Shown piece by piece: positions 14,952 to 64,000 of a DNA stretch of 64,000 bases. The notes beneath the pieces are model-generated. The model was not told the DNA's origin. It was given only the letters and a program-made list of their open reading frames with translations, and made no database searches. The translations under genes and the position numbers were made by a program. The stretch spans positions 31,372,001-31,436,000 of the forward strand of contig NC_043004.1 in NCBI RefSeq assembly GCF_006345805.1. The letters are read 5' to 3'. Within the stretch, counting starts at the first letter, position 1; each line of letters begins with the position of its first letter. The DNA is from Octopus sinensis (lineage: Eukaryota).

Positions 14952-15026
<75 letters not shown>

Positions 15027-23220: not shown

Positions 23221-25345
23221 CATCATCATCATCATTTAACGTCCATTGTCCATACTGGCATGGGTTAGACAGTTTGACGAGGTCTGGCAAACTGGAAGGC
23301 TGCACCAGACTCCAGTCTGTTTTGGCATGATGTCTATGGCTGGATGCCCGTCATAATGCCAACCACTTTGAGAGTGTAATGGGTGCTTTTACGTGCCATG
23401 GGCATGGGTACCATTTGTGTGACACCGGTATCTGCCATGACTGTGGTTTTACTTGGCTTGATGGAGTTTCTTCTCAAGCATGGCATAACGCCAAATGATC
23501 TTGGTCCTTCCCTCTGTGAGGTCCAACGCTCGAAAGGTGGTTTTACCTATTTCCATGACACCACTATCTGCTACAACTGCGATTTTATTTGGCTTGATGG
23601 GTCTTCTTCTCAAGCACAACATAATGCCAAAGATCATTGCCTTTGTGTGGCCCAACATCCAAAAGGATCTCAACCACTTTTCCTCCATGAGTCTCAATGC
23701 TCGAAAGGAGCTTTTTACATGCCACCTGTACAAGTGCCGGTTATGCGACACCAGCATCAACCACAACTGTGATTTCACTTGGCTTGACAGGTCTTCTCAA
23801 GCACAGTATATCACCAAAGGTCTTGGTCACCAGTCATTGCCTCTGTTCGGAGATCATGCTTCACCACCTCATCCCTTGTTTTCCTGAGCGTACCTCTACC
23901 ACAGCTTCCTTCCACAGTTAGGGATCAGCACTTCTTTACACAGCTGTCCTCATCCATACACATCACATGACCATATCAGTGCAGCCATCTCTCTTGCACA
24001 CCACATCTGATGCCGTTTATGCCTTTTTTCTGAAGATGCTTACACTCTGTCAAACATGCACACTGACATTGCACATCCAGCGAAGCATATTGGCTTCAGT
24101 TTTTTCAAACCTATGCATGTCCTTGGCTGTCACAGTCCATGTTTCACGGCCATGTAGCATAGGTGTTTGCATACAGGCATCATACAATCTGCCCTTCACT
24201 CTGAGAGTGAGGCCCTTTGTTGCCAGCAGAGGCAGGAGCTCTCTAAACTTCGCCCAGCTTAATCTTATTCTGACAGCTTTTTTCTTTGTTAACCTTCCTC
24301 TGATATTGATGCACCTTTTCTGTGTCCAAAGCTTACATCAGGTGCATCTTACAGAGTTACTACCTACATGTTTTCTATAGATTGAGCAGGGACATCTACC
24401 TGAAAGGATTTATGATTTGTCTGCCTTCCTACTTACTAAGACTTTGGTTTTTGCTAGGTTAACTCTAAGGCCCTTCGATTCTAGACCTTGCTTCAATACC
24501 GGGAACTTCTCTAGTTCTGGTAGTGATTCAGCTATAAGAACAAGGTCATCAGGAGCTCCCTGAGGCAGCTTGTCTTAAATTCCCCTCTGTCATTGTCTGG
24601 AGGACTATGATGAACAAGAGAGGGCTTAGGGCCAATCCTTAGTGAACCTCTACTTGTACCCTGAATCCTTCACTGTACTCATTGCCAATTCTCACCTTAC
24701 TGGTAGTATCTTTGTACATGGCTTGTACAGCTCTTACAAGCCACTCAGCCATCCCTAGTTTCAGCATTGACCACCAGAAAAGGGATCAGGGACCTTGTCA
24801 AAAGCTTTCTCCAAGTCAACAAAAGTTAAGTACAGAGGTTTATCTTTGGCTATGTATTTCTCTTGCAGCTGCCTTAACCAGAAATATAGCATCAGTGGTG
24901 CTTTTCCCTGGCACAAAACCAAACTGCATGTCATCTAGACTAACTTTCCCCCTAATTAGTTGGGCTATGACCCTCTCCATGACTTTCTTCACTTGGTCCA
25001 ACAATTTGATACCTCTGTAATCATTCCCATCTAATGTGTCACCTTTACCTTTGTAGCAGTTAACTATGGTGCTGCTACACCAGTCATCAGGTATGACTCC
25101 TTTGTGAATCACCTGATTTACAATGCAGGTGACTGAACCGTCACCTACACCAGCAGATATTTTAACCATCTCAGTGGTGATTCCTGAAGGGCCAGAGGCT
25201 TTCCATGTCTTCATATCCTTAATTGCTTTATCTACCAAGATACTGTCAATTCGGGTAGCTGGTCCCTCAATTGGGCCAACATTTGGCAGGCTCTCCTCCT
25301 CCCATTAATTCTCTACATTCAGCAGTATTTTGTAATGGCATTTCC
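23221..25345 (-). mobile_element. 5'-truncated, decayed RTE-clade LINE (RT, C-terminus and 3' UTR with (ATG)n tail)
   Basis: Minus ORF 24840-25238: KASGPSGITTEMVK...YKGKGD..NDYRGIKLL..MERV..QFGFVPGKSTTDAIF. A C-terminal MLRWMCNV-like segment lies near 24000-24100, and the tail TTAAATGATGATGATG ends at 23221. Confidence 0.9.
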
Positions 25346-34187: not shown

Positions 34188-35436
34188 TAGGATCATCAAA
34201 AAAGGTTTCTGTGATTTTAGTTGTCAATTGCACTAGCTATAAGCAAGCGATCTGTATGACATCAACGTGGGACTGTATAACAGTTGTAGGAGTTTTGATA
34301 TTTGCCATTGCATTGTCCTTGAAATCACTATTTCACAAGCAAGCCTCTGGCCAATCACTGCATGGCAATCATGGTGACTGTACAGCAGAAAGCACAGTGT
34401 GTATTGTGGCAAGCTGAGTTTAAGTCAGTTGTTTTAGTGCAACGTCGTTTTCGGCATACATATGGACAAGATCTACCTACAGACAAAACCATTGTTTGAT
34501 GGTTTAACCAATTTAAAGAAACTGAAAATGTAAACATTAAGAAATCTCCAGGCCAGCCACACACGTGGAGCATTTGAGATTGTCATGTTTGCGTAGTCCT
34601 TAAGAAGTCCATCGCTCGATGCAGTTTGGAACTTGATATGCCTAAAATAATAATTCAAATTGTGCTACATAAGCGCCTAAGACTGCATGCTTACAAAATT
34701 CAAATGAGGCATAAAATTAAGGAGACAGATAAGCCTAAACACATTGAATTTGCTGTAACAGTGCTCAGAGAAATTAATGATGGTGATAGTTATCTTAACA
34801 GAATTTTATTTAGGCATTTTCCAGTATATCCTTGATTCATCAAAGGTTGATGTATGGTGGGGAGTCCTGCATGACTGTGTTGTCAGCCCTTTCATGTTTA
34901 CAGAAAACATGATTACGGGTGCTAGTTACTTGGACATGCTAGAAATATTCCCTCAAGTTGCAGACATTGAAAGAGAAAAGGGAATAAGTGTAATTTTCCA
35001 TCAAGACAGAGCACCAGCTCACTACAGCCATAATGTAGGACAAGCTCTTAATAACAGATTCCCTGGCCGTTGTTGGATTGAAAGGAATGGTCCTGTTTGT
35101 GGCCACCCTGATCTAACTCCTATGGACTCTTTCTTTTGAGGTTATCTGAAGAACATTGTCTAGGCAGAAAAAATCCGGGATCTGCGACATTTAAGAGAGA
35201 GCATCCACACAGCGATAGCGACCGTGAATCCTGAAATAAATCAGCGCACCTGGTGGGAGGTCAACTATTGCTCAGATGTTTGCCATGCATCAAAGGGAGC
35301 TCATATCAAAACCTACTAAGTGACGGAAGAAAAATTCAAGATTTTCTGTGTTTTGGTATATAAATAAATAGTATGCCTTTAATACAGACTTAGTTATTTC
35401 ATTTTGAAATCATGGAAACCTTTCTCGATGACCCTG
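34188..35436 (+). mobile_element. Near full-length decayed Tc1/mariner element (DUF4817-type N-terminus) with both TIRs and TA TSDs
   Basis: Left TA|TAGGATCATCAAAAAAGGTTTCTGTGATTT; right AAATCATGGAAACCTTTCTCGATGACCCTG|TA. Frames give MVTVQQKAQCVLW..EFKSVVLVQRRF, HAYKIQ, FHQDRAPAHY, PDLTPMDSFF*GYLK and KGAHIKTY*. Confidence 0.92.
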
Positions 35437-36960: not shown

Positions 36961-37059
36961 ACCCTTCGATTTAGCTCACAATGAGCACTTCTTAATACAG
37001 TCCATATATTGTGAAGTATATTTAAAAACCTACTTTATAAGAAAATTTAATTTCAATGT

Positions 37060-37262
37060 GACCTCATGTGTACCGTTGGCAATTTCTTTTCCTCTGTCTT
37101 CCCTTCTCTGGATCTTTCCTTCTATGTTTCCGACAAAGAGCTCTGCTCGAAACGTTAAACCCTCCTTGTTTCCTTCTTTCCTGAGCGTCCAATAATACTA
37201 TATTTGTTCCACGTCCTCGCGTTGTTGTGTTTTTTTGTGCTTTCTTGTTTGGATTAACTTTA
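37060..37262 (+). mobile_element. Penelope-like terminal repeat with a decayed hammerhead; same family as 41855-42045
   Basis: High similarity to 41855-42045, including GTTTCCGAC(A/G)AAGAGCTC(T/C)GCT(C/T)GAAACGTTAAAC. Confidence 0.75.
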
Positions 37263-37352
37263 TGTGTATATATATATATATAGGATAATGTTGTCTCAAT
37301 TTTTCTCTGCTTTAGAATATTTCTTTAATAATAATTTTTTGTTTATTTCCAG

Positions 37353-40084: not shown

Positions 40085-41100
40085 AATTTCCTTTAAATCA
40101 CTAGGAGTATAGAGTTGTAGATTTTAGGGATGAGAGTGTAATTCCCCTATAGTTCTGAGATGAGTGAAAATTGCCTTTTGAAAGTTGAATGATTGAAGTC
40201 TGCCAGAAGGCTGTTGGTTTGTTTCCTTTAACAGTCTCATGACAGAAATCTAACTGATGTTTGTGGAAGAGTGGGCTCTTCCAAATAATGGCTGGAATGT
40301 TATCTGGATTTTGTGTCATGTCTTGTTTCTTTACTTTTTTTAGGCATTTTTTAGTCTCTTCTATTGTAAATGGGTGAATCTGGATTGGCAGACTATCTGC
40401 TACTTTGTGGTTGAAGAAAAGATTGTCTTCAGTTTTGTGTTGCATAACTTGGTATTACCAGCTGTAAAGTACTGAAACAAGGCATTTAGCATCTAGATTC
40501 AAGGCAGTGGTTTCGCCTACACTATAAGTCACTGGGAAAGCAATCCTTAATAGAATTGCCCCTCATATTGATCCCAACCTCAGTTGGAATCAAAACAGCT
40601 TCTACAAAGACAGATGATTACTGCCACAAATCTTTGCCCTTAAAGAAAAGCTCAGAATCTACCAGTAAGAGGCATTGATTATATTTGTGGATTTAATGTC
40701 AACTAAAGGTCCAAGTTACATATCCTATTTGAACTTAATATCCAATATGAGATTACTATCATGTATGAAAACCCATCAAACCTTGTGCAAAGCACAGACA
40801 GACCAAATAAAGAGTTTCCAACAACAATAGTCTTCTGTGAGACACCTTAACTCCTTTTTATTTCATGATTGTGGTGGATTACTTCATTAGGTGGAGTCTT
40901 GACACTATCCATGACAAAGCCCTTACTATGAATCATAAGCAAAGCCTGTATCTCTCTGACCGTGGCTATGCTAATGATCTTGCTCTCTCACAGCTCATCA
41001 ACTGAGTCATACACAACACTTGTGAACATCTCTTGAGAATGCTGCAACCAAAGTTGGTCTGTTCCTCAATGCAAAAAAAAAGTCTGAATACATTACCATC
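40085..41100. mobile_element. RTE/RTE-X-like LINE RT fragment with inverted 5' part
   Basis: Minus 40101-40445 ends QNYRGITLSS. Plus from ~40537 continues KAILNRIAPHIDPNLSWNQNSF, IIFVD, DTLTPFYFMIVVDY, YANDLAL and KVGLFLNAKKSEY. Confidence 0.82.
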
Positions 41101-41222: not shown

Positions 41223-41258
41223 CTAATGTTTATACTGACTCTGGTAGCAGCATTTGCT
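41223..41258 (+). CDS. SFT2D2: SFT2 exon (36 nt): LMFILTLVAAFA
   Basis: TTTTCTTTTTCAG acceptor, GTAAGT donor; fills the missing transmembrane segment in frame. Confidence 0.93.
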
Positions 41259-41538
41259 GTAAGTAACAGATTTTTAAAATTGTTTTGTCTTCTTTTTACA
41301 ATGACTTGTGTTGATAGATTTTCTTACATAATCAGCTAGAAATCTAAACATACTGTCTAGGCCTAATATGTATGTGTATCTGTAAGTGCATGTCTATGGA
41401 TAAATGAATTATCTTGTTACGGATTATTCAAATTATAACCGATACCTGGGTAGCAAAAATCACAACAGAAAAATCACGGTTGAGGTTACGACCATGGGGT
41501 ATCGCAACCGTGCCTTAGTGCGGATAATTGAAGTTTTA

Positions 41539-41810
41539 TATATTTAGTGAGGGAAGAAATGGAGCTGAACAAAGATTTTACAAAATTCCTTTTTATTATT
41601 TTCTACATGGGCTCCTAGGGAGCGTTTGTTCGAAAAGCTTGCTGCGCATTTGTTTGGAGATTTAAGTTCCTGGATTTTCCTGAAGAGAAGGCTGCAAAAT
41701 GGTCTCCTTATTCAATCCGAAGTAGGGAATTTGCAGCCTTTGAAACATGTGTAGAAAATAATAAAAAGGAATTTTGTAAAATCTTCATTCAGCTCCATTT
41801 CTTCCCTCAC

Positions 41811-41818
<8 letters not shown>
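41539..41818. repeat. 69-bp inverted repeat (41539-41607 and 41750-41818) around a 142-bp spacer containing a hammerhead
   Basis: Arms are reverse complements with two mismatches. Confidence 0.9.
41674..41759 (+). ncRNA. Type I hammerhead ribozyme candidate with a canonical core
   Basis: Stem I ATTTTC/GAAAAT; core CTGAAGA (41680-41686); 12-bp stem II GAAGGCTGCAAA/TTTGCAGCCTTT; GAAA (41742); stem III AC-ATGT-GT; GUA cleavage predicted after 41753. Confidence 0.75.
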
Positions 41819-41854
<36 letters not shown>

Positions 41855-41855
<1 letters not shown>

Positions 41856-42045
41856 CCGCGTGTGTACCGTTGGCGATTTTTTTTCCTCTGTCTTCCCTTC
41901 TCTGGATCTTTCCATCTATGTTTCCGACGAAGAGCTCCGCTTGAAACGTTAAACCCTCCTTCCTTCCTGAGTGTTCAATAATACTATATTTGTTCCACGT
42001 CCTCACGTTGTTGTGTTTTTTTGTGCTTTCTTGTTTGGATTAACT
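41855..42045 (+). mobile_element. Penelope-like terminal repeat
   Basis: Homolog of 37060-37262, flanked by TA arrays. Confidence 0.75.
41920..41954 (+). ncRNA. Minimal type I hammerhead-like motif (U4C core, extra A after A9)
   Basis: GTTT CCGACGA A GAGC-TCC-GCTT GAAAC GT T AAAC: stem I GTTT/AAAC, palindromic ACGT stem III. Confidence 0.55.
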
Positions 42046-42354
42046 ATATATATATATATATATGTATACACACACACACACACACAATTGGCTTCCTACA
42101 GTTTCTTTTTACTACTCACACAGCATTGGTCAGCCAGGGGCTACAATAGAAGATGCCTGCCTACATTGCTATGTAGTGGGACTGAACCCAAAACCATATG
42201 GTGGCATAGCAAACTTCTTTATACATACATGCATCCACCTATATGTGTGTGTGTGTATATAAATGGATTTGCTACTTGTTTCTTCGGGATTGGTCAAATG
42301 ATCTGATGAAACTGCAATAAGGGTTGAAAATCGAGCAGTTTTTTCAGTCTGCAG

Positions 42355-43138
42355 AGAAACAGGTAAAATTTGACAGTTTGCATAAAAGGAAAATAAAATA
42401 AAATATCCCATGCAAAAGTAAAAGTATTTTAAAAAATCAAAAAATATTAACTAGATTATGGCTGGGAGATAACAGTTTACTCCAAGTAGCCACCCTCAGC
42501 TCTCACCATAGCCTCAAGACTACTCCAGAACCTGGTACATGTGTGCTTCACTGTGTTCTGGGAAGATCTTCAAACACCTCCTTGATCTTGGCCACCAGCT
42601 CAACCACACCCTACCCATAGTAATCCATGGATTTACAATTGGGATAATTAAGAGGCCAGAAATTCTCCAATAACCACTTCTGACTCTTTTGTCAGTATGG
42701 CTAGGAGCCAAATCCTGCTGGCACACATATGGCCTTCTAACAGCAACGCTCAACAACCAGGGTTTGACCACAGTCTGCAGCAGCTTCACGTAGCCATATG
42801 AATTGACCCGAAGGTCTTGTCCAAAGATGTAGAGATGCAGTCAACACTTGCTGTGTCCCTTCCTGCTGGCCACAGCTTCATAGTCTCTGTTGCAGCTTTA
42901 CAGTGTTCACAGAGCATTGAGCAACAGTCATGATGTTGGCATTTTGTTACCCAGCACAAATCATCATGACACAGGTAACTCTTTTCCAGTATTAAGATAG
43001 CTTCCAGTCTTCCATGTCAGCTACTGTTTTCTCAACTACAACTTTAATCTTTATGCTCTCAAACACTTCGACTGTTCACCAGTACAACAAGTATTGGTGA
43101 ACATAAAATATTATCAAATTTAGCCTGAACACCCTGTA
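42355..43138 (-). mobile_element. Internally deleted Tc1/mariner (maT/DD37D-like) element
   Basis: Minus: YVKLLQTVVKPW...RPYVCQQDLAPSHT. Terminus TACAGGGTGTTCAGGCTAAATTT at ~43139; second copy at 52440-52800. Confidence 0.75.
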
Positions 43139-45573
43139 GTTTTACATCCATATATATGTATATATACTTACAATATGTGTGTGTATGCATATTTATGTAT
43201 GTAATAGTTGTAAAGAAGTTTGCTATATAACGACATGATTTTTGGTTCATTCCTGCTGTGTGTCAGTGGGAGCAGGTATCTTCTATTATAGCTTCAAGTT
43301 GACAAATACCTTGTGAGTAAAATTGGTTGATGGAAACTGAAAGAAGCTCATCATATATGTATGTGTGTGCCTTTGTCTAGACATTACATAATAGTTGTAA
43401 ATGAGCATCATCATACAACCAAGGTGGTTCGTTTCCAGTCTTCCATGCTATGGGAAAAACAGTACCTCGCTTGGAAATGGATGAGGGTTGTAGAAAATCT
43501 GCCTCAACAAATTCCATCTGACCCATGCTTACATAGATCAGAAATGAGCATTAAATGATGATGTATGTGCATCTGTAGTATGTTTCTATAATAAACATAT
43601 TCAGTGTTAACATATAACTGTTAGCACCCAAATATCAATGAAACATGTATACAAGTGCAAACAAAATTAATTACTATACTGTAGAAGAGATGAGATCAAA
43701 AAATCTAGTCTTTATAATCCAAACACAGTCCTTGTGAAGCAAGCAAGAGTTCACAAATGAAAGAAAAAGCTTAACCTGTACTTTGTACAATGACTTCTAA
43801 CACATTACCGTATAATATTACACATACCGTAAGTCAATCAGTATCTTTATCTCTTGTAACTGTAAAATTATACCTGATAACCTGTTTTTTCTTGTAAAAT
43901 AACTGATGTCATTAGTGTCTACACTGCAGCTGCTGACACATTTAATGTACTTTTGTGTAGGTAACTGACAGTTTTTTTTGTATTTTAAATGAATTTCTTA
44001 AATTTTAAAAGCCAAGACTGTGCTGGTTCTTGGTATTTCTAAACAGCATCAATCCATTGATCATTAGGACAGTTGTTAAATGATTATTGAAACATCATAA
44101 ACTTCCAATGCTAAGTACCAGGTTCCAACATCTTTGTAACCTTTGGAACATACTACCCACTCAACACTCTTACTGTCAGGTATAAAATTTGGGGCCTGCA
44201 ACAATTGATGTTATCTCAATAAAAAATAGGTTCAAATAGATTGTAGAGATGACAGAGCAGAGGTAGGTGCATATGTGTGTGTATATGTATTGTATATATA
44301 TACATATATATATATGGTTGCTAATATGTTATAATGTCATATGTCCAAATTAGGCCAAAGGCGTTTTTTTTGTTTTTGTTTTTTTCAGTATTTATTTTTG
44401 CTTGCAATAGTCTGTTCTTTTGGTCAAACTATCGTATCTCCAGCTGCTTCAGATACCAAGATATCAAAAATTGTCAAAGTGTAGTACAACAACAGTTTTG
44501 CTATGGGATGGTGGAATCATGATGTTAGAAGTCCATACAGAATAATAACACACTTACACTTAGTGACATTGTAAAGAGATTGAAAATGCAAAGAGCAGGA
44601 CATGTGTGAGTTCAGGGAAGTACCAGCTGAAGCATTTCAAAGGAGATAGAGACTCTTAAAATAGAGGACAATTAGAAGTTTCTTTGAGACACCTTCATTG
44701 TTGTATTAAGAGAATGCACGGGTCTAACCAAGAGAGATACCTCCATTGAGGGTTCTGCCATTCACATTGACAATTGTTGTGTTTCAAGTGCAATTTAGGA
44801 TATGAAGACAAGGAAGGTACCTTGTCTTCCATTGGGAATCACCAGGGATGCTTAAAATGTTTGGAAGGCTCTCAAGAACATCCACTTCTATTGGTAATTA
44901 GGTCACCTATTTAGTTGACCTAAATTATCAGTAGAGATGAGTGTTCTAAAAGCATATTAACCAGAATAAGAATATAGTGGAGAAAGTTCAGGAAGCTATT
45001 ACTTCTTTGCCTGGAAAGGGTTTCTCCCACAGAATGAAAAGCATTTTGTATGATGCTTGTGTATGAAGGGCAATGCTGCATGGTAGTAAGATGTGGGCCT
45101 TGGTCAAATGCAGCAGAGTATTTGTGAAGACTTCAAGTCAGTGAAGTAAGCATGTTTTACTGGATGTCTATGTTAGTGTGTATGAAGTGTGGGGTATGAA
45201 TGGGCTGACAGAAAAATTAGATGTAAGAGGAATCAGATGTAATGTGCAGGAGAGGTTACTGCACAGTTGGGGGTATGTGATGTGTAGGGGGGATGTTTCT
45301 GAATAAAAAATTGCTGAGTGGTCAGAGGGGAATCTATAGAATCTGTATATTTTTCACATGTTTTCGGTCATTCGACTGCAGACATGCTGGAGCACTGCCT
45401 TAGACCTCATTAGTTGAACAAATTGACCCCAGTACCTTTTCTAAGCATGATACCTCTTCTGTTGGTCTCTTTTGTCAGTCTGTTAAGTTACAGAGACATA
45501 AATCAATACAAGTGGTGAAGTGGTGGTGGAGGATAAACACAAACTCCACACTGAAAATTTTTTTTTTTTAAAT

Positions 45574-46115
45574 GCTTTGTCAGACCGTACTGTTCGTGCG
45601 AATGATATAATTAGAATTAAGGTTACCTGTTAAGATACATTATGACGCTATATATAATATTTTAAGATGAATCCAAAATATGAAGTGTGACTAGATTAAA
45701 ATCCTATAGGCTAATTATTTTGAGGGAAGAATCTAAAAGTTGAAAGATATTTATGTCTAAAAGTAATTATGACCTCCAATATCTTATTAAGTAAGCTTTT
45801 TTTTTTTTTGTTGGCACGGAGTATGTGGATTGCCTCCTTCATGCATAAATTGCAATTTTTAGTGTGTGTATTATATGGTGTGGTTTCCATTATGATAGAC
45901 CAATCTAGACAGAATTCTTTATCACGCATTTTTAATTTATCGATGTGGGTAGCTAGTGTGGTTTAAATTTTTGTTTCATGATTGATAAATGAATTTGTGT
46001 GTGCTCTATATCTAATCTTAATCTAATCACCCTTCATATTTGGGATTCATTTTAGAGTAATTATTATATATAGTGTCATAATGTATCTTAACATGTAACT
46101 TCAAATCTAATTATA
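45574..46115 (-). mobile_element. Penelope-like element 3' fragment: GIY-YIG C-terminus between ~97-bp inverted arms
   Basis: Minus ORF 45711-45929: LDWSII..TTPYNTHTKNCNLCMKEAIHIL...LLNK..EVI...RHK. Arms 45606-45702 and 46015-46115; a CTGACAAAGC core remnant at 45583-45574. Confidence 0.82.
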
Positions 46116-53089: not shown

Positions 53090-53153
53090 TCACTCATCAG
53101 GACCAACAGGCTTTACTGTCAAACCACGACGAATTTGTCCCCAGCCAATTAAT
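53090..53153 (-). CDS. EIF2S3: eIF2-gamma last coding exon: (R)LIGWGQIRRGLTVKPVGPDE*
   Basis: TTTGTAG acceptor at 53154-53155; TGA at 53092-53090. Confidence 0.97.
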
Positions 53154-53274
53154 CTACAAAAGAAAAGATTCACCAGTTTAATTTAAGAAATATCAATTAA
53201 TTAATTTTGAAGAATCATCAATCTCATAAAATAAAAAATGACATCATGAAGATTCTAATAAATTTTAGTTTTAC

Positions 53275-53447
53275 CTCCAGTGCTTTTCAACTCTCCGACT
53301 CAGAGCAATTTTCTCACCAATCTCTGTACAAACAGGTGAAGTCAGAACAATTTTAGCCAAATCAGCTTTTACAGCCAAAACTCTCCCACCAGTTGATAAA
53401 GAACCTATGTTTACCATTAAAGTTTCGTTCTTAGCCAATTTTTGGAC
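53275..53447 (-). CDS. EIF2S3: eIF2-gamma exon (173 nt): [21 protein letters not shown]...RRVEKHW(R)
   Basis: Canonical splice sites; near-identical to known eIF2-gamma domain III. Confidence 0.98.
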
Positions 53448-55014
53448 CTGAAAAATAAGAAACACGAATGAAAACCAAAGAACATCAACTAAAAAGCTTT
53501 GGGAGAATATTGTTCCACATATTTCTAACGATTTCTCCATCAACCAACACTTAAACCTAAAGTATTAAATTGCTTCATATTCTAGCAATAATACCAAATG
53601 ATATTTTGCTTACCTTTTAGTTTAAAACAAGTGATCCAAACATGAACTTTCACTCAATCAAGAAGTTAAATACAAATTATTATAGACAAGCTTTAATTTT
53701 ACTCTTGTAAAAAAAAAATCTATAATCTTTTTGTTGCTTAACTTTTATCTTTTGTGTGTTTTTGTTATTGAACTGTGACCCATGCTGGCACACCACCTTC
53801 AGGGGTTTAGTCAAACAAATTGACCCCAACATATTGTTTACAACTGGTTCTTAGTCTATGGATTGTTTTTGCCAAATTGCTAAGTTACAGGAATGTAAAC
53901 AAACCAACACCACTTGTCAAGCAGTGGAGAGGACCAAACACACATAATATATATAGGAGGCCATATAGGCATGTCCCTTATATCCACACTCACCCACCCA
54001 CAACACCCAGCCTGCACATAATCTGTCCTAACAAACCTAGATCCCATCTACCCCAACTCTCTTCCTTCTCTCCCAATCTCCCCTGTTGAATCTCTTCCCC
54101 CACAGCATATTCTAACAACCCATCTCTGCTTCAGTCCACTTGCTACATTCTCTCCACTGCCCACTCTCCTTTCGCAATCTTACAAACTTATCTACTCACT
54201 CACCTTCTCTAATACTTGCTCTCACACATGCACCTCCCTGTAACTTGAGTGTACCCACCCCATTGCACCATCACCCCTCTCTCTGCTACTGAGATAGCCA
54301 TGTATCTCCTTTACTGCAAGACGCCTATTTCTGTCCCTCAGACTCTAACCTCTCACCCAGCACAAAACCACTTCTCGCGATACTACTCAGTCGAGATCCC
54401 CTCAAACCATCCAACCCATGCCAACATGGAAAACAAATGTTAAATGAAGATAATGATGGTGGTCATACATAGATACACATACAAATACTACAGGATATCA
54501 CACAGGTTCCATCTACCAAATTTATTCACAAAGCATTGGTCAGTCCAGGGCTATAGTAGAAGATACCTGCCCAAGATGCCATGTAGTGGACTCCAAACCA
54601 CATTGAGCAAAGTGAGCTTCTTAGCACAAACTATACTGGTCACTTTTATTTTGTTATTAAGCTTGAATAAATGAGGACAAAAAGCAGAAGGCATCACTAA
54701 TGAGTGACTAATTTTTCACTAATACAGCAAATCCTACTTGAATAACACATTTCAGTTAGAACAGCAAGCAGATCAAGAGCTCTTGCTTATTATCACATTT
54801 TCTCTCTTTTATTAATTTCTAAAATGCACAAAATTAAATAGTTTTGAAACTGAAGTTAATCATTTTTTATTAAAGAAATGCCTAGTTAAATAACATTCAA
54901 TTTCATGAAAAAATAAGCCAACATTGACCTACAATAGAGAAATGTTCGTTATAATGCTAAAACATTAAACAAAATTTCCATCACTAGTTTCCTTGGAGAA
55001 GAATTTTACTGCAA

Positions 55015-55648
55015 CAATGGAAACCCTTAACTTGGTCCTAATCGTTATTAAAACAATGGAAACCCTTAACTTGGTCCTAATCGTTATTAAATAGTTATTA
55101 AATCAATGGAAACCCTTAACTTGGTCCTAATCGTTATTAAATAGTTATTAAATCAATGGAAACCTTTAACTTGGTCCTAATCGTTATTAAATAGTTATTA
55201 AATCAATGGAAACTCTTAACTTGGTCCTAATCGTTATTAAAACAATGGAAACCCTTAACTTGGTCCTAATCGTTATTAAAACAATGGAAACCCTTAACTT
55301 GGTCCTAATCGTTATTAAATAGTTATTAAATCAATGGAAACCCTTAACTTGGTCCTAATCGTTATTAAATAGTTATTAAATCAATGGAAACCTTTAACTT
55401 GGTCCTAATCGTTATTAAATAGTTATTAAATCAATGGAAACTCTTAACTTGGTCCTAATCGTTATTAAAACAATGGAAACCCTTAACTTGGTCCTAATCG
55501 TTATTAAAACAATGGAAACCCTTAACTTGGTCCTAATCGTTATTAAATAGTTATTAAATCAATGGAAACCCTTAACTTGGTCCTAATCGTTATTAAATAG
55601 TTATTAAATCAATGGAAACCCTTAACTTGGTCCTAATAGTTATTAAAT
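55015..55648. repeat. Intronic minisatellite of 39/50-bp monomers with a 228-bp higher-order repeat
   Basis: Core CAATGGAAACCCTTAACTTGGTCCTAATCGTTATTAA; order S-L-L-L'-S' restarting at 55015, 55243 and 55471. Confidence 0.97.
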
Positions 55649-55706
55649 ACATATTAAGCTGGTCACACTTTATTTGCAATTCTAACACAAGGTGTAAATG
55701 ACAAAC

Positions 55707-55876
55707 CTTTGCTCCTTTCTTATCGCCTTCAGTTTTCACACCCAATAATCGGCGGAGCAAAAAGTAAGATATTTCCAATTCTGTATAAATTTCTGGTAAC
55801 ACACCAACACCTCCTAATACTTGCCCCACCATTCTATCAGCACGGCATAATGTTGGGTCAATTTTTGTTCCAACAC
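55707..55876 (-). CDS. EIF2S3: eIF2-gamma exon (170 nt): (G)[21 protein letters not shown]...EGDKKGAK
   Basis: Canonical splice sites; conserved sequence. Confidence 0.98.
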
Positions 55877-56490
55877 CTACAAGGTAAAATAAAAAAAAAA
55901 AAATCAGTATACATAAAATTAAGAATGCATTTAGTTAAATTAGAGATTACAAATTAATAAGCATTTTAAAAAAATTTACTTTCTGAAGTAACAACTTTAT
56001 ACTAAAAATATATTCAGACACAAAAACTGGTTTAACCATATTAATCTATGTTCCGAATCCCAGTTTAATAATGACCTATTTTATGAAATTCTTAATTACT
56101 TCCAAAATAAATTGAAACAAATAGTAATATTGTAACAAAAGGGTTAAAGTGAAATTTATAAATGGAAGCTAAAAACCTCAATGGAATACACAGAAACAGC
56201 TCTAGATTTAGAACATTATAAAACATTTTAGCTTGAAGAAATAGAAAACCTTTTTGTGATTTTATTTCTACACACGTAGATCCAATAAATGTCCAAACAA
56301 ATGATATGAAGTGAATTTAGTCAAATAAACTGGAGGTATTTTTATTTTTTACGATATTAGGCTGGTACTAAGAAGACATCAACTATGATTTTATATAAAC
56401 ACTTCAGCATTTACCAGTTTTATGGTGGATACAAAAAGAGTTAAAACCTTAGAGAAATGTTTCTAAAAATTTCACAAAAATCAACTATAC

Positions 56491-56635
56491 CTATTAAACC
56501 ACCAGGAACTGCATATTGTAAATCATTTTGCTCAGCAAATAGTGACAGAATTCTGGATAAAATAGGTTTACATGACAGTTGGCCATCCTTTTCTTTGCTT
56601 ACTATTCCAGGCCGTACTTCAATTTCTTGTCCAAC
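56491..56635 (-). CDS. EIF2S3: eIF2-gamma exon (145 nt): [12 protein letters not shown]...[11 protein letters not shown](G)
   Basis: Canonical splice sites; conserved sequence. Confidence 0.98.
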
Positions 56636-57079
56636 CTGAAATATAATAAATATCAAATTAATGCAAAGAGTGACATTTCTTTTGTCTAACATCTTCTGAA
56701 ACTATGTCAACTCATTCATTCATGTCTGTTTTTCTCACACTTGCAAGGATTAGAATTAGATGAATGTATTGAAGCATTGTTTTGCTGGATGCCCTTCCTG
56801 TCACTAACCTTTACCCGTTTACCAACTAAAAGGATCTTTTATTGCACAAGTCTTCAAACATGCAAAGTCAGTGGATGATGTGTTGAATGGGAAAATGACA
56901 ATATTTACCACTTGTAGTTTGAAATTTTCATTCAAGAACAAGAAATTAATAAAATCTGCAAATGCTTGGGCTGTTACATGTTCTGGTGAGGAATATGTGG
57001 TAGTGCTACTTTAGAACAAAGTTCTGATACTGTGTTGTCTGTTTTCTCATTGTAGATGTTTTGTAGAAAGGGAGAAAGA

Positions 57080-57480
57080 TAAATTCGACTTTACCATATG
57101 TTTGATGTTGGCTGCAGATCTTGTATGATGGGTTAAGTATTTGTTATTCAGGGATATATATCAACTCATTTCTTCTGCATAAGCTAATGTATTTCCAGAC
57201 TGTTTTTACCCAATGTTATAGGTATTTGATGATTACTTTCTTAACAGTCGATGGATGGTGAAATACAATCCAGGGGTGGCAGAGTCCAGCAGTTGTAGTT
57301 TATTGATCCACTGATATTCCGATTGGCTCCAGTCCTTTCCTTTTCACTAATATATCCAAGACAGACAGTTGGCTGTTGCTCTTTTTCTTTTCACGCAAAA
57401 GAAGATTAATGTAGGAGTTGGGTCCATGTGCTCTACAACAACTTGGAGATGCTCTTAAGTGTTGCAAGGCTACAACAGTG
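57080..57480 (-). mobile_element. Decayed Penelope-like RT/thumb fragment
   Basis: Minus translation QLSVLDILVKRK...TTTAGL..W..FHHPSTVKKVII...KICS resembles the PLE LPFLD-VYRKPT-SFHP-K.ICS region. Confidence 0.6.
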
Positions 57481-58634
57481 TCACCTTCAAAACTGCAGGT
57501 TTCAGTGTTGTATTTTCTAGAGTTAAATTTTCAAAACAGTTCATGCAGATACTTGCCATGAGATGGTGATAATGGAGCACCCACAGCCATCCCATCCACT
57601 TGCAGGCAAATTTCATTTTAAATTTGAAGTTAGTAGTTGTTAGGCACACTGGTGACATTGATATTATCAACTGGTATTTTTGCAGCCTACTAAGAACTGC
57701 AGTTCTTATGTATAAATAGCAAATTAATAAATTGAAGGCTTACTGGGCATCAAAATTGTATGTATATGAGAGGGCCAAGAAAATGTCTATGTCTGGTTCT
57801 ACGACATAGACACCTAAAACAAAAAATAGCTAAAGGGTGGTACAATCTAATAGGTTCTACTCACTTGTGAGTAGACATGCATTGTTAGGTATATGTACAT
57901 GTAAGCACACACACATATATGTATGTATACATATATATATACACACATGCATGTACATGTGTGTGTGTATATATATATATCTGCATATTATTAAATCTAC
58001 ATCGTTGGTCTCTTTGATAGCCTCTTGTCCCTTGGACATCTCCATCATTTACCCATTTCATCACATATACCTCTGATGTCTATTGTCCATGTCTTTATCC
58101 CTTATGCCCTATTGCTCATCTCTCACTCACTCCCTTCCAACGCCCCATTAAGTGTGGGATCAAGAGATGCCTTTAATCTAGAAGACATGACAAATTCCCT
58201 AGTGCTACTGCTATGAGGAAATACAGCAAATACACCCTATAAAAGGGGGGGGGTGATAGGAAGAGCATCCTGCTATGGAAATCAATCTAATGACGAAAAA
58301 CTCAAGACTTGATCCTCTAACTCACCAAGAAGTGCAGTAATATCCATACAATACATGCCAGCATAGAAATGGATGTAAAACAATGTTGATATGTGTATGC
58401 AGGTGTGTGTATTATTTTAACAGGTGAAAGCACTTGATAGGTGCCGTGCATGAAACTCTTGGCCCTTGAGTTACTTTATAACTTTTACCAGTTACAATAA
58501 AGAAATATGTATATTCGTGCATTGAGTTTTATTTATCTTGTGTTTGAACCAAACCCATACATGTATGTTTATAAGTGTGTGTGTGTGTGTGTAAGCAAAC
58601 ATGCATGCATAAATAGATATCAATTCAAAATTAC

Positions 58635-58729
58635 CTTCAAAACTCCTTTTAAAATACTACCACCAGCAACACCCCCTTTCACTTCATTCACTTCACAGCC
58701 TGGTTTATTGACATCAAAGGATCGAATAA
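58635..58729 (-). CDS. EIF2S3: eIF2-gamma exon (95 nt): (V)[31 protein letters not shown]
   Basis: Canonical splice sites; conserved [10 protein letters not shown] motif. Confidence 0.98.
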
Positions 58730-58899
58730 CTGGAAATAAAAGAAATACATTGTTCATAAATTTGAGGTATCAGATGAGATTTCAAAAAAACATCAAACTA
58801 ATTCAATTTCTTACAGAACTTCACAACACAATTTATGAAAACATACAGAACAGGATTGTAATCAAACAAGCACAATTAATATGTTGAATAGTAACTTAC

Positions 58900-59034
58900 C
58901 TATTAACCTTGGTTCTGATTTAAAGTCTCTCAAAGGGACAGGTATTTTTTTATCAATATATTCGCATACAACATCAATATTATATTTCAACTGAGCAGAT
59001 ACAGGTATGATAGGGGCACCCTCGGCTATCGTGC
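58900..59034 (-). CDS. EIF2S3: eIF2-gamma exon (135 nt): (G)[44 protein letters not shown]
   Basis: Canonical splice sites; SAQ (G5) motif. Confidence 0.98.
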
Positions 59035-60067
59035 CTGTAAAGGTAAAGAAAGAAGTATGATATTTACTTTGTAATAAAGGGACAAATTATAACTGACATT
59101 TGAATTAACCTGTTTGAACAAAGAATACTTTGAAGGGAAATGAAATGAATTAAAGAAGAAATTCTGAAATAACACTATTTTACGAAATATCTTTCCTTGC
59201 ATTATCATATCAATAGATGACCTATTTCAGAAACACAATGTGTTGGTCACAAAATTTCTCTGAAAGAATTCAAAAGTATTCCTATTGCCTTTTTTGGGTG
59301 CTTTTTACAAAATACTATCTGGTTGTCTGTTGCCAAGAATAAGAGAAAAGCAATTACCCCAAAAGGATGAAAGCAAAGTTTATGCTAACAGGGTTTGATC
59401 TTGTTTCTGCCAATTTACATCATTATATGTAATGTACAGATCAGGTATTTTGTTTCACTGTATTGCCTATCTTTCAATTTTGTAATCCACAGATCAGGTA
59501 TTTTGTTTGGCTGTCCTGACTATCTTTCAATATATAAAAAGGAATTTATTTGACCCTTTTGATTCCAACTGACTTGAAACCACTCCACTGGTTCTAAGGT
59601 ACAAATTCCCTGCTTTAAAATTATCTAAATTTTAAAAATTCCATCAAAATTTCATGTTAATTTATGTTCCAAATACCAACTTAATAATTAAATTCAATAT
59701 TTTCATAATTAACTGAAGCAAAGATAGCGTATTTCATTAGAAATATAGTAATAAAAAGGGTTAATAATGTTGCATTATTTTCTTAGACAAAAATTTTCAA
59801 CAGAATTTTCCAAACCAAACAATGAAAGGTGGTGGTGGTGAGAAAATCAAGAGTTTTGGATATAATACCTTTACATCTCTTTATATTCTGAATTCAAATC
59901 CTGCCCATGACAAGTTTGCCTTTTGTCTTTCTCTTGTTTTAGGAGTTTTTGTTGACTGTATTATTATATCAACAAAATCTCTTTAAAACAAGCTACACAG
60001 TCTAATGGCTGACACCAGTAAAAAGAATAAAAGAATGCAATAAAATAACAGTCCAAGAGCCACTTAC

Positions 60068-60226
60068 CTTTTACAAAAGCTAAAATCTGCTCGTATTGCT
60101 CCTTGGCTTGGGATTCTTTTACCAAATCTATTTTGTTTTGCAGAATAATAATGTGTTGCAATTTCATAATTTCTATAGCAGCTAAATGTTCTGATGTTTG
60201 TGGCTGTGGACACGGTTCATTACCCG
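60068..60226 (-). CDS. EIF2S3: eIF2-gamma exon (159 nt): (A)[14 protein letters not shown]...[10 protein letters not shown]...ILAFVK
   Basis: Canonical splice sites; NKID (G4) motif. Confidence 0.98.
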
Positions 60227-60774
60227 CTGGAGACAAATGTAAATATAAAATATATAGTACAACAAATAAACTGAGAGAAACATACTGAAAACGCTTGTTT
60301 GAAATTACTAATAAAATACATTAACCCTTTTGATACCAACCAAACTGAGAATGGCTTATGAGACAAGCTTCTTGTTTTAAAGTGATCTACATTAAAACTT
60401 TCCATCAAACTTTAATATAAATTTAAGTTTGAAACATAAGGTGATGCTTATTTGTTCACAATGTTTTATATTAATCAGCCATTATGTCAGTTCCATGGTT
60501 TTGATGATGTAATGGTTTCATTTTAGAATGATATTGTAGGGTAGGTGTGATCAGTGTGAACAAAAAACAGAATATTTAGGCCTGATATGGCCAGTTTAAA
60601 TGCTGGGTTGGATTGCCTATGTTCAGTCCACTGCAGGACAAAGGCTTCAGCATGTTCTCTCCATTAGAGAATGGCTTGAGATCAAATTGGTTCGATGAGC
60701 CTACTCTGCCACAATGGCTCAACATGAATTGGCAGAGGGATGCAGTTTTTTTCTATTGCTAATATTAGTGGTCT

Positions 60775-61000
60775 CAAGAAGGCAGCAAGCTGGCAGAATC
60801 ATTAGCACGCTGGGCTAAATGCTTAGCAGCATTTCATCTTTCTTTACACGCTGAATTCAAATTCTACCAAGGCTGACTTTGCCTTTCATCCTTTTGGGAG
60901 TCAATAAAAGAAGTACGAATTGAACACTGGGGTCAATGTAATCAACTTACCCACTCACCCGAAATAGCTGGCCTTGAGTCAAAATTTGAAAACCAATATT
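60775..61000 (+). mobile_element. SINE family B
   Basis: GCTGGCAGAATCATTAGCACGCTGGG...GAATTCAAATTCTACC...TTTGCCTTTCATCCTT; similar copy at 63225-63430. Confidence 0.8.
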
Positions 61001-61607
61001 AATGGTCTCAGGACTGGATTAGCTGGTCTCATACAACCTAAGGCCTGACTCATTCATCTCATACTGCAATTGTCCAGCTGGACCTTGCACTAACCAATTC
61101 TGAAATTTTATCTCCAGTCTCATGTTTTTTCCAGTGCTAATTGACATAGAAAACTGACTATTTAAACCTCACATATCTCAGAGAGCCTGTAAAAGATATG
61201 AGGACCAGCCCCTTCCTCCAGACCAAAGCAGCTTAAAAAAATATTCAAGAAGGCTTGAAGTTCAAAAGATTAACCCTTCAACATGTGAACTGACCATATC
61301 CGGCCTAAATATCCTACTTGTTTTGTTTGAACCATTTGGATCTGGACCCTCATACTTATCCAAATATGTCATTCTAAAAATAAACAATCATATCATCGAA
61401 ATCCCTAAGTAATGAGATAATGCATGATTAATTCAAAACAGTGTGAATAGATAAGCATAATATTTGACAGAATAATCTGAATACTAAAGGATTAAATATA
61501 TCATCAACCTCACTTATTTGATGCTGGTAGAATGCAATAGAAATATTAGATGTACAAGAACACTAAATTGACAACGATGTGTTAATGAAAAAGAAAAATA
61601 TACTTAC

Positions 61608-61702
61608 CAATAAGTAAGAGAGCAGCATCCATGACAGCAGCTCCATTCAACATGGTGGCCATAAGAATGTCATGGCCAGGACAATCAACAAATGAAACAT
61701 GC
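61608..61702 (-). CDS. EIF2S3: eIF2-gamma exon (95 nt): (R)[31 protein letters not shown]
   Basis: Canonical splice sites; DCPGH (G3) motif. Confidence 0.99.
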
Positions 61703-63224: not shown

Positions 63225-63430
63225 GGCTGGAAGAATCGTTAGCATGTTGTATGAAATGCTTAGCAGTATTCCTTTCAGTTCTTTATGTTCTGAGTTCAAA
63301 TCCTACCAAAGTCAACTTTGCTTTTCATCCTTCAAAGAGTGGAGGGATAAAATAAGTACTGGGGTTGATGTAATCAACTAATCCATTCCTTCTAAAAACT
63401 GCTGGCTTTGTGCCAAAACTTGAAACCAAA
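63225..63430 (+). mobile_element. SINE family B
   Basis: Colinear with 60775-61000. Confidence 0.78.
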
Positions 63431-63841: not shown

Positions 63842-64000
63842 CTGAAATTTACAGATGTGGATAAAATAAATGGTTCTTTTGAAATGATATATTTTTATAA
63901 ATTAAAAAAATTTATCAAATCAACAGGACAATATAAATGTTTAATAATGAAGAATGATTATTCTTTTACTGGTTTCAGCCAGAAGCTGGGGCCATGCTAG

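What the first reader, a model, noticed from the sequence alone, without database searches (positions are those of the whole stretch)
41674..41759. Canonical type I hammerhead ribozyme candidate, sense in an SFT2 intron
All conserved core nucleotides are present (C3 U4 G5 A6 N7 G8 A9; G12 A13 A14; A15.1-U16.1; GUA site). Stem I is 6 bp, stem II is a 12-bp helix extended by TCCTTA/TAGGGA, and stem III is 2 bp with an ACATGT palindrome suited to dimer cleavage. Only G10.1-U11.1 deviates, probably by CpG decay. It is invisible in the ORF track and lies ~415 nt downstream of a 36-nt exon, so activity would cut the host pre-mRNA. With five related motifs from at least three families in this window, it points to a ribozyme-bearing Penelope/retrozyme-like system in this genome.
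Basis: partly seen in the sequence, partly recalled or inferred. Interest (0 to 1): 0.85.

Follow-up and report, generated by a model that had tools for sequence, protein, structure and literature searches.

The report
Hammerhead-like motif in octopus intron repeat
The hammerhead-ribozyme-like pattern is really there, but it scores below the family threshold, sits inside a very young inverted-repeat insertion in an Octopus sinensis SFT2B intron whose long hairpin buries the supposed cut site, and has no relatives to test it, so it is probably not a working ribozyme of the host gene.

Summary
The motif at 41674-41759 (+) is as described: full hammerhead core, 6-bp stem I, 12-bp stem II starting with G·U, 2-bp stem III, GUA site. 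Rfam's type I hammerhead model aligns to exactly these coordinates, but only in a 104-nt search, at 20.3 bits against a gathering score of 34. Whole-window scans report no hammerhead family. By chance such a motif is rare per window (about 1e-3 to 1e-4) but expected several to tens of times in a 2.7-Gb genome.

The window is Octopus sinensis, and the site is in an SFT2B intron, 416 nt after a 36-nt exon. The motif lies inside a 284-nt element (41537-41820) with 71-nt inverted arms that were 71/71 identical at insertion, next to (TA)n. The 3' ten bases, including the cut site, are in the right arm. In context stem I has a pairing probability of about 1e-10.

The element is identical across the motif in O. 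vulgaris and absent from O. bimaculoides and Argonauta. No paralog turned up in about 253 kb. The "five related motifs" were not found.

Verdict: a young mobile-element insertion carrying a sub-threshold hammerhead-like motif. Coincidence is about 0.5, a transposon-borne relic about 0.35, and host function is unlikely.

The parts
41537..41820 (+). 284-nt inverted-repeat element (insertion) that contains the motif
   Evidence: Arms found by the repeat finder. The whole element folds at -142.9 kcal/mol, z = -15.6. It is present at the orthologous site in O. vulgaris (L001 63012-63295, 1 substitution). It is absent from O. bimaculoides L002 and Argonauta L004.
41537..41607 (+). Left inverted-repeat arm (71 nt). 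Outer 7-8 nt are TA-rich; the terminal motif is TTAGTGAGGG
   Evidence: 97% complementary to 41750-41820. The only mismatches are at 41570-41571 (CA). O. vulgaris has CG there, so the arms were 71/71 at insertion.
41608..41749 (+). Unique 142-nt internal segment, holding the 5' three-quarters of the hammerhead-like motif
   Evidence: No similar sequence in about 253 kb of octopod DNA.
41750..41820 (+). Right inverted-repeat arm (71 nt). Its first 10 nt are G16.2, U16.1, A17 and the stem I 3' strand, together with U41750 of loop III
   Evidence: Pairing probabilities of 41750-41759 with 41598-41607 are 0.95-1.00.
41674..41759 (+). Type I hammerhead-like motif (sub-threshold)
   Evidence: Rfam RF00163, model positions 1-45/45, 20.3 bits against a gathering score of 34, E = 0.0062 in a 104-nt search. 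Only descriptor hit in the window.
41680..41686 (+). C3 U4 G5 A6 A7 G8 A9 core box (CTGAAGA)
41687..41741 (+). Helix II: 12-bp stem (41687-41698 / 41730-41741, closing pair G·U) with a 31-nt tip. The tip contains the 6-bp TCCTTA/TAGGGA sub-helix
   Evidence: Pair probabilities are 0.46-1.0 even in the full-element context.
41742..41753 (+). G12 A13 A14, then the self-complementary 8-mer ACAUGUGU (helix III / dimer interface), then A17. Predicted cut site is 41753/41754
41813..41851 (.). (TA)n microsatellite abutting the right end of the element. The left end abuts TATATAT
   Evidence: No unambiguous target-site duplication can be read.
41223..41258 (+). 36-nt SFT2B exon (LMFILTLVAAFA) upstream of the element
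   Evidence: The concatenated exons are 99% identical to O. sinensis SFT2B XP_029640207.1.

Best explanation
The motif belongs to a very young 284-nt inverted-repeat mobile-element insertion, either MITE/foldback-like or a head-to-head pair of truncated retroelement ends. The element landed in a (TA)n tract of an SFT2B intron in the common ancestor of Octopus sinensis and O. vulgaris.

Transcribed as part of the pre-mRNA, its two 71-nt arms zip into a near-perfect duplex. That duplex buries G16.2, U16.1, A17 and the whole 3' strand of stem I. The 12-bp 'stem II' hairpin sits on the branched tip.

The hammerhead-like arrangement is a sub-threshold resemblance, most likely fortuitous. It comes from an internal hairpin flanked by CUGAAGA and GAAA plus an AU-rich 6-mer complementary to the start of the right arm. 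It does not act as a self-cleaving ribozyme on the host transcript.

The element is removed with the intron. Its realistic molecular consequence is a long intronic dsRNA, which in octopus is the usual substrate for ADAR hyper-editing.

Shown here: the anatomy, age, lineage restriction, predicted folds and sub-threshold score. Inferred: lack of cleavage, the fate of the dsRNA, and mobile-element status, since no other copy could be retrieved.
For: - Inverted arms of 71 nt at 41537-41607 and 41750-41820.
- Element fold of -142.9 kcal/mol, z = -15.6.
- In context, stem I pair probabilities are 3e-11 to 1e-10 and arm pairs at 41750-41759 are 0.95-1.00. Forcing the hammerhead fold costs +16.8 kcal/mol.
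- In nascent transcripts stem I never exceeds 2e-4. The arm helix dominates once the 3' end passes about 41766.
- Rfam Hammerhead_1 scores 20.3 bits against a gathering score of 34, and only when 104 nt are searched. There is no hammerhead hit.
- Chance expectation is about 6 (decoys) to about 38 (rescaled Infernal E-value) such motifs per 2.7-Gb genome.
- Several features typical of natural hammerheads are missing (criteria from PMC4209133 and PMC7229834):
  - there is no G10.1-C11.1 pair;
  - helix II is 55 nt, against the usual 4-8 bp, and there is no loop1-loop2 geometry;
  - there is no tandem partner.
- The insertion is young and lineage-specific.
  - The motif is identical in O. vulgaris.
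  - 28% of 284-nt windows in this region have one difference or none, so there is no excess conservation.
  - The element is absent from O. bimaculoides and Argonauta.
  - The arms were 71/71 identical at insertion.
- No other hammerhead-like motif above chance occurs in about 253 kb of octopod sequence.
- Long near-perfect dsRNAs from palindromic or inverted repeats are the main hyper-editing substrates, and octopus ranks highest (PMC5625713).
Against: - At its own quality the motif is rare per window (about 1e-4 to 1e-3).
- The full Hammerhead_1 model aligns end to end. That includes the family-specific self-complementary helix III 8-mer.
- The isolated 86-mer is predicted to form a double-hammerhead dimer, -54.2 against 2 x -23.5 kcal/mol.
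- U11.1 sits where a CpG would have been, in a region with CpG observed/expected of 0.27.
- The geometry also fits a PLE-type insertion:
  - inverted arms sharing one terminus;
  - a (TA)n target;
  - the motif 61-67 nt from that terminus (PMC8557442, PMC11167929).
- PLEs are present in octopus (PMC13282606; remnant at 45714-46022).
- Mobile-element status itself rests on structure and lineage restriction. No second copy and no clean empty site were found.
- The thermodynamic predictions ignore kinetics, proteins and editing.
Confidence: 0.5

Rival explanations
1. This is a genuine transposon-borne type I hammerhead: a recent, 5'-truncated copy of a PLE 3' end or of a PLE-dependent retrozyme-like non-autonomous element. 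The direct copy would be 41608-41820, joined head-to-head to a shorter 71-nt inverted copy at 41537-41607, and inserted in (TA)n. The hammerhead would be the element's own dimer-type ribozyme, with a short self-complementary helix III, made to work in tandem or multimeric element transcripts. In this solitary intronic copy it would be silent or nearly so.
For: - Full-length alignment to RF00163, including the <<<<>>>> helix III.
- Per-window chance of about 1e-3 to 1e-4.
- Dimer predicted to be favoured by about 7 kcal/mol.
- Palindromic 15.2-16.2 and loop 3 is one of the non-descriptor hallmarks of PLE hammerheads, and a long helix II and short helix I are typical of them (PMC4209133).
- PLEs often carry an inverted 5'-truncated copy and prefer microsatellites such as (TA)n (PMC8557442).
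- In an Anolis PLE the cut site lies roughly 85-92 nt from the insertion's 3' end (PMC11167929). Here it lies 59-67 nt away.
- Recently active Penelope families are reported in O. vulgaris (PMC13282606).
- A PLE-like GIY-YIG remnant lies in the same intron.
- CpG decay could explain U11.1.
Against: - No RT or endonuclease coding sequence adjoins the element. The nearest PLE-like remnant is 4 kb away on the other strand and shares no DNA similarity with it.
- No second copy and no other hammerhead turned up in about 253 kb.
- The one complete PLE-like element recovered (Argonauta L004, 832-nt direct repeats) has no hammerhead by my descriptor.
- G10.1-C11.1 is absent. Helix II, at 12 bp plus a 31-nt tip, is longer than the reported 6-8 bp.
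- The insertion is so young that only CpG changes have occurred. Its other oddities therefore cannot be blamed on decay.
- The inverted arm ends 4 nt upstream of the cut site, not at it.
- Motifs that cannot be grouped into a family are the ones the original PLE hammerhead study discarded.
Confidence: 0.35
2. This is a host-exapted intronic ribozyme. On this reading the hammerhead cleaves SFT2B pre-mRNA, as monomer or dimer, and so regulates splicing or abundance. It would be comparable to the conserved intronic hammerheads of amniotes (Rfam HH9/HH10).
For: Sense orientation in an intron of a conserved gene, 416 nt after a 36-nt exon. Core intact.
Against: - Not conserved: absent from O. bimaculoides and Argonauta.
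- No excess conservation between O. sinensis and O. vulgaris.
- The cut site is sequestered in a 71-bp duplex.
- A 2-bp helix III needs a partner that a single-copy intron lacks.
- Score below the gathering threshold.
- No tertiary-contact loops.
Confidence: 0.04
3. The relevant feature is the hairpin, not the hammerhead. On this reading the 284-nt inverted repeat is a hairpin-RNA locus, meaning a source of endogenous small RNAs or a dedicated ADAR or Dicer substrate with a regulatory role. The hammerhead resemblance would be irrelevant.
For: Near-perfect 71-bp duplex, z = -15.6. Octopus has exceptionally abundant hyper-edited dsRNA (PMC5625713).
Against: - No evidence of selection.
- Very young and lineage-specific.
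- Only chance-level matches to miRNA families, driven by the hairpin and (TA)n.
- Such hairpins are common by-products of repeats.
Confidence: 0.06

Closest known systems
Type I hammerhead ribozymes of metazoan repeats (Rfam RF00163: newt satellite 2, Schistosoma Sm-alpha, non-LTR retrozymes)
   Same: Open helix I, full catalytic core, GUA site, and a 2-bp helix III inside a self-complementary 8-mer that could form a double hammerhead. AT-rich element of about 300 nt. Rfam's model aligns over its full length.
   Different: - 20.3 bits against a gathering score of 34.
- G·U instead of G10.1-C11.1.
- Helix II is 12 bp plus a 31-nt tip instead of about 4 bp with a small loop, and there are no loop1-loop2 contacts.
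- A single copy, not tandem.
- The 3' strand lies in an inverted repeat that out-competes stem I.
Minimal hammerheads in the pseudo-LTRs of Penelope-like elements (Cervera and de la Pena 2014, PMC4209133)
   Same: Longer-than-usual helix II and a palindromic 15.2-16.2/loop 3. Low or no expected monomer activity. Often found as solitary motifs from truncated copies. Host elements make inverted truncated copies and favour microsatellite targets (PMC8557442).
   Different: - No adjoining RT/GIY-YIG ORF or pseudo-LTR.
- No family, and therefore no covariation.
- G10.1-C11.1 is not kept.
[quoted passage not shown]
- Helix II is still longer than the reported 6-8 bp.
MITEs and foldback elements (non-autonomous DNA transposons with terminal inverted repeats)
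   Same: Size of 284 nt, AT-rich, with 71-nt terminal inverted repeats that were identical at insertion. TA-rich insertion site, a very stable hairpin, and lineage-specific presence. The terminus TAGTG fits the hAT-type YARNG pattern; that pattern is recalled from memory and is only a lead.
   Different: - No unambiguous target-site duplication.
- No second copy in about 253 kb.
- No matching autonomous element identified.
Conserved intronic hammerheads of amniotes (Rfam HH9/HH10)
   Same: Sense-strand hammerhead-type motif inside an intron of a protein-coding gene.
   Different: Those are conserved at orthologous sites over long evolutionary distances, with stable helices. This one is confined to two sister species, scores below threshold and is structurally sequestered.

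Membership tests
Hammerhead ribozyme, type I (Rfam RF00163) | Conserved core: C3 U4 G5 A6 N7 G8 A9, G12 A13 A14, A15.1-U16.1, H17 | tested here: met
   CTGAAGA 41680-41686, GAA 41742-41744, A41745-U41752, A17 at 41753.
Hammerhead ribozyme, type I (Rfam RF00163) | Three helices around the core, with helix I open-ended | tested here: met
   helix I 6 bp, helix II 12 bp, helix III 2 bp (or a 4-pair self-complementary 8-mer).
Hammerhead ribozyme, type I (Rfam RF00163) | Score at or above the curated gathering score (34 bits) | tested here: not met
   20.3 bits, seen only in a 104-nt search. No hit.
Hammerhead ribozyme, type I (Rfam RF00163) | G10.1-C11.1 closing pair of helix II | tested here: not met
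   G41687·U41741. A CpG-to-TpG change could explain it (CpG observed/expected 0.27), but no copy with C is known. O. vulgaris also has T.
Hammerhead ribozyme, type I (Rfam RF00163) | Loop 1 / loop 2 tertiary contacts needed for activity at physiological Mg2+ | tested here: not met
   From the sequence: helix I is a plain 6-bp AU-rich stem with no internal loop. The helix II tip lies 12 bp from the core. This is a geometric argument, not a 3D model.
Hammerhead ribozyme, type I (Rfam RF00163) | Hammerhead fold attainable in the native transcript | tested here: not met
   Stem I probability is about 1e-10. The hammerhead fold lies +16.8 kcal/mol above the minimum free energy. No co-transcriptional window exists at equilibrium. 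This is a thermodynamic prediction only.
Hammerhead ribozyme, type I (Rfam RF00163) | Covariation in the helices among homologs | tested here: inconclusive
   The only homolog is the O. vulgaris ortholog, which is identical over the motif. No paralogs in about 253 kb.
Hammerhead ribozyme, type I (Rfam RF00163) | Site-specific self-cleavage | not testable with these tools
   Needs in vitro transcription or RNA end mapping.
PLE pseudo-LTR minimal hammerhead | Lies in the direct repeats flanking an RT plus GIY-YIG ORF, or in a recognisable truncated copy of one | tested here: not met
   No such ORF is adjacent. The nearest PLE-like endonuclease remnant is at 45714-46022 on the minus strand, and it shares no DNA similarity with the element.
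PLE pseudo-LTR minimal hammerhead | Belongs to a genomic consensus family rich in compensatory changes | not testable with these tools
   Whole octopus assemblies could not be searched. No copy in the loci held.
PLE pseudo-LTR minimal hammerhead | Palindromic 15.2-16.2 and loop 3 | tested here: met
   ACAUGUGU is self-complementary with two G·U pairs.
PLE pseudo-LTR minimal hammerhead | [quoted passage not shown] | tested here: inconclusive
   G41687 can be read as that nucleotide only if U41741 is also left unpaired and 10.1-11.1 becomes A-U (the bulge = 1 register).
Metazoan non-LTR retrozyme | Head-to-tail tandem repeats of 150-450 bp, each with a type I hammerhead | tested here: not met
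   Single copy. No tandem array at the site. The repeats here are inverted, not direct.
MITE / TIR foldback element | Terminal inverted repeats | tested here: met
   71-nt arms, 97% complementary now and 71/71 when the CpG changes are reversed by comparison with O. vulgaris.
MITE / TIR foldback element | Target-site duplication and an empty site in a relative | tested here: inconclusive
   The flanks are TATATAT and (TA)n, so no boundary can be fixed. In O. bimaculoides the whole interval 41399-43219 is unalignable, so there is no clean empty site.
MITE / TIR foldback element | Multiple dispersed copies | tested here: inconclusive
   None in about 253 kb of non-redundant octopod DNA. Genome-wide search was not possible.
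Conserved intronic hammerheads (HH9/HH10 type) | Conservation at the orthologous intron across distant species | tested here: not met
   Absent from O. bimaculoides and Argonauta hians. No Rfam hit to those families.

The most novel reading that the evidence does not exclude
The element is a recent copy of an undescribed hammerhead-bearing non-autonomous retroelement of octopuses, either PLE-dependent or retrozyme-like. That would make it the first hammerhead ribozyme family reported in cephalopods.

It would have an unusually long helix II and a dimer-type helix III. The copy in SFT2B could cleave the pre-mRNA at a low rate, for instance when ADAR editing or helicases open the arm duplex.
Probability: 0.3. 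Interest if true: 0.45.

Novelty: new member of a known kind. Interest (0 to 1): 0.25.

Why it matters
If the motif is transposon-borne, it would extend hammerhead-carrying retroelements to cephalopods. I found no such report: the one paper holding both topics concerns Penelope-like elements that lack canonical hammerheads. It would also give a young, datable insertion for asking how such ribozymes behave inside host introns.

If it is fortuitous, which is about as likely, it is a useful caution. In a 2.7-Gb AT-rich genome, several to tens of full-core hammerhead look-alikes are expected. Hairpin-rich repeats supply the long helices that make them look convincing. Either way there is no evidence that SFT2B is regulated by a ribozyme.

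Tried and rejected
1. Rfam at gathering threshold on the window gave nothing. Rfam at E<=10 on 601 nt and on all 64 kb gave no hammerhead. Only a 104-nt search let the weak hit through the filters.

2. Exact search for the arm terminus in JGI metagenome contigs and IMG/VR found 0 matches.

3. Copies of the element were sought by blastn and nhmmer in the window and in L001-L006. Only the O. sinensis and O. vulgaris orthologs were found. A terminus search allowing 4 mismatches also found nothing else.

4. I tried to obtain octopus PLEs so as to see their hammerheads.
   - A PLE-like 790-aa ORF from Argonauta L004 returned only Argonauta and unnamed metagenome proteins, none from Octopus. It has no Pfam match.
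   - Its 832-nt direct repeats hold only a core-like CTGACGA...GAAA with no helices.

5. I tried to sample more octopus genome through a Tc1/mariner fragment. That led to ENA contigs of another organism, which share only that transposon with the octopus loci.

6. Exact look-ups of two ORFs overlapping the element found nothing on record.

7. I looked for a decayed hammerhead downstream of the PLE-like endonuclease remnant at 45714-46022 and found none.

8. Ideas considered and rejected:
   - A retrozyme: there is no tandem array.
   - A template cleaved at the hammerhead giving rise to the inverted arm: the arm runs 4 nt past the cut site.
   - A double hammerhead formed with the core at 42303: it has no complementary helix III.
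   - Special conservation between O. sinensis and O. vulgaris: 28% of equal-sized windows are as conserved.

9. In one search a multi-record file made the O. sinensis match look like O. bimaculoides. This was corrected.

Full report
**What is in the sequence**

- Stem I is ATTTTC (41674-41679) paired with GAAAAT (41754-41759).
- The core box is CTGAAGA (41680-41686).
- Helix II is 12 bp (41687-41698 / 41730-41741). Its closing pair is G·U. Its 31-nt tip contains TCCTTA/TAGGGA.
- GAA lies at 41742-41744. A15.1-U16.1 and C15.2-G16.2 enclose AUGU, and A17 is at 41753.
The registered 8-mer ACAUGUGU is the self-complementary segment, with two G·U pairs.

**Family models**

- Rfam found nothing at gathering threshold. 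It reported no hammerhead family at E<=10 in 601 nt or in the whole window.
- When only 41665-41768 was searched, so that the filters are lax, Hammerhead_1 (RF00163) aligned to exactly 41674-41759. It covered model positions 1-45 of 45 at 20.3 bits, against a gathering score of 34, with E = 0.0062 for that search.
- The alignment includes a 51-nt insertion in helix II.
- The motif is therefore a full-length but sub-threshold type I hammerhead look-alike.

**Chance**

- My descriptor finds this one hit on both strands of the window.
- For the lenient descriptor, dinucleotide shuffles expect 0.065 per window. Permuted-core decoys on the real sequence expect 0.05.
- At the candidate's own helix lengths, 3,779 decoys on 253 kb of octopod DNA give 0.002 per Mb, about 6 per 2.7-Gb genome.
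- Rescaling the Infernal E-value gives about 9e-4 per window and about 38 per genome for this family (derived). Both figures are rough.
- The motif is unusual for a window and unremarkable for a genome.

**Where it is**

- The window is 100% identical to Octopus sinensis CM016866.1 (L003).
- An SFT2B gene runs on the + strand. Its 36-nt exon is at 41223-41258, 416 nt upstream of the motif.

- The motif lies inside a 284-nt element (41537-41820) with 71-nt inverted arms at 41537-41607 and 41750-41820. The element abuts a (TA)n tract.
- Part of loop III (U41750), then G16.2, U16.1, A17 and the whole 3' strand of stem I are the first ten bases of the right arm.
- The element folds at -142.9 kcal/mol, z = -15.6.
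- In that context the stem I pairs have probabilities of about 1e-10, while the competing arm pairs have 0.95-1.00. Forcing the hammerhead fold costs 16.8 kcal/mol.
- In nascent transcripts stem I never exceeds 2e-4. The arm helix wins once about seven more bases have emerged.
- The isolated 86-mer can fold with stems I and II. As a pair it prefers a double hammerhead, -54.2 against 2 x -23.5 kcal/mol.
- However, there is no second copy in the window and no tandem array at the site.

**Comparative evidence**

- *O. vulgaris* carries the element at the orthologous site with one substitution, at 41571 in the left arm. The motif is identical.
- Local divergence is 1.3%, and 28% of 284-nt windows have one difference or none. 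There is no excess conservation and nothing to show covariation.
- In *O. bimaculoides* the alignment breaks at 41398 and resumes at 43220. The element is nowhere in that 92-kb locus.
- *Argonauta hians* lacks it too.
- The two arm mismatches are a CpG site. O. vulgaris still has CG at 41570-41571, so the arms were 71/71 identical at insertion, and only CpG transitions have occurred since.
- The youth of the insertion means its other atypical features were already present in the source copy.

**Which kind of element?**

The structure fits a MITE or foldback element. It fits equally a head-to-head pair of 5'-truncated Penelope-like element (PLE) ends.
- PLEs often carry an inverted truncated copy and favour microsatellites (PMC8557442).
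- Their hammerheads have long helices II and palindromic helix III regions, and often occur as solitary motifs (PMC4209133).
- In one studied PLE the cut site lies under 100 nt from the insertion end (PMC11167929).
- Penelope families are reported as recently active in O. vulgaris (PMC13282606).
- I found a PLE-like GIY-YIG remnant at 45714-46022 on the minus strand of this window.

Against the PLE reading:
- No RT or endonuclease sequence adjoins the element.
- No paralog or further hammerhead appears in about 253 kb, or in two further contigs.
- The one complete PLE-like element recovered, in Argonauta, shows no hammerhead.
- G10.1-C11.1 is missing.
- The defining test, a family with covariation, could not be run because whole octopus genomes are out of reach of these tools.

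**The wider claim**

I could not find the 'five related motifs from at least three families'. The only other core-plus-stem-II match, at 42303-42329, lacks stems I and III and gets no hammerhead hit. No other ribozyme family appears.

**Verdict**

The label 'canonical' and the inference of host pre-mRNA cleavage are not supported.
- Most likely (0.5) this is a young inverted-repeat insertion whose hammerhead resemblance is fortuitous. Its main property in RNA is a long duplex, the typical ADAR hyper-editing substrate in octopus (PMC5625713; inference).
- A relic of a genuine transposon-borne dimer-type hammerhead remains a serious rival (0.35).
- A host-exapted ribozyme is unlikely (0.04).
- One genome-wide BLAST of the 284-nt element would settle most of this.

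Noticed in passing
window 45714-46022 (-): Remnant of the C-terminal GIY-YIG endonuclease part of a PLE-like RT-EN ORF. By tblastn it scores E = 1.7e-13 to P0135 and contains one in-frame stop. It lies in the same SFT2B intron, on the opposite strand to the motif, and is shared with O. vulgaris. No hammerhead relic lies downstream of it.
   Followed up: partly
L004 43575-48968 (Argonauta hians, SFT2B intron): [quoted passage not shown] It is flanked by 832-nt direct repeats that are 99.6% identical. It has no Pfam-A match and no hammerhead by my descriptor. Its relatives are mostly unnamed ENA and Logan contigs of about 2.5 kb.
   Followed up: partly
window 42303-42329 (+): Second CUGAUGA - 4-bp stem - GAAA core, about 550 nt downstream of the motif on the same strand. 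It has no stem I or III and no Rfam hammerhead hit.
   Followed up: yes
window 41399-43219: A 1.8-kb interval, holding the element and several repeats, that is present in O. sinensis and O. vulgaris. At the same place O. bimaculoides has 5.2 kb of unrelated sequence starting with (TG)n and containing an assembly gap. The nature of the rearrangement is unresolved.
   Followed up: partly
window 41850-42068 and 37056-37282: Two copies (89% identical) of a roughly 220-nt repeat within SFT2B introns. Next to it, 42054-42221 matches several diverged SINE-like copies in the octopus loci.
   Followed up: no
window 13747-14960 (-) and 34777-35139 (+): Decayed Tc1/mariner transposase remnants (weak DDE_3 match). 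The first has copies 77-81% identical at the DNA level on long contigs of ENA sample ERZ21867824. Those contigs share nothing else with the octopus loci.
   Followed up: partly
window 24840-25238 (-) and 40101-40445 (-): Fragments that look like non-LTR retrotransposon reverse transcriptase. The first has a weak RVT_1 match. The second has no significant Pfam match and lies about 0.8 kb upstream of the 36-nt exon.
   Followed up: partly
window about 53090-64000 (-): An eIF2-gamma (EIF2S3-like) gene lies tail to tail with SFT2B. The same arrangement is seen in O. vulgaris, O. bimaculoides and Argonauta.
   Followed up: no
window 1210-3406: Long (TA)n arrays at 1210-1799 and 2435-2714, plus a roughly 0.97-kb direct duplication (1520-2490 against 2436-3406, 96.5%) with duplicated 105-aa ORFs.
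   Followed up: no
window 55013-55657: Minisatellite with a unit of about 39-50 nt and a 228-nt higher-order period (99% matches), in an eIF2-gamma intron. It contains no ribozyme-like core.
   Followed up: partly
whole window: Strong CpG depletion (observed/expected 0.27, against 1.01 for GpC) at 34.7% G+C.
   Followed up: yes
L004 33462-33534 and 33752-33824 (+): Two tRNA-model hits (37.4 and 34.0 bits) 290 nt apart in the Argonauta SFT2B locus. They could be tRNA genes or tRNA-derived SINE heads.
   Followed up: no
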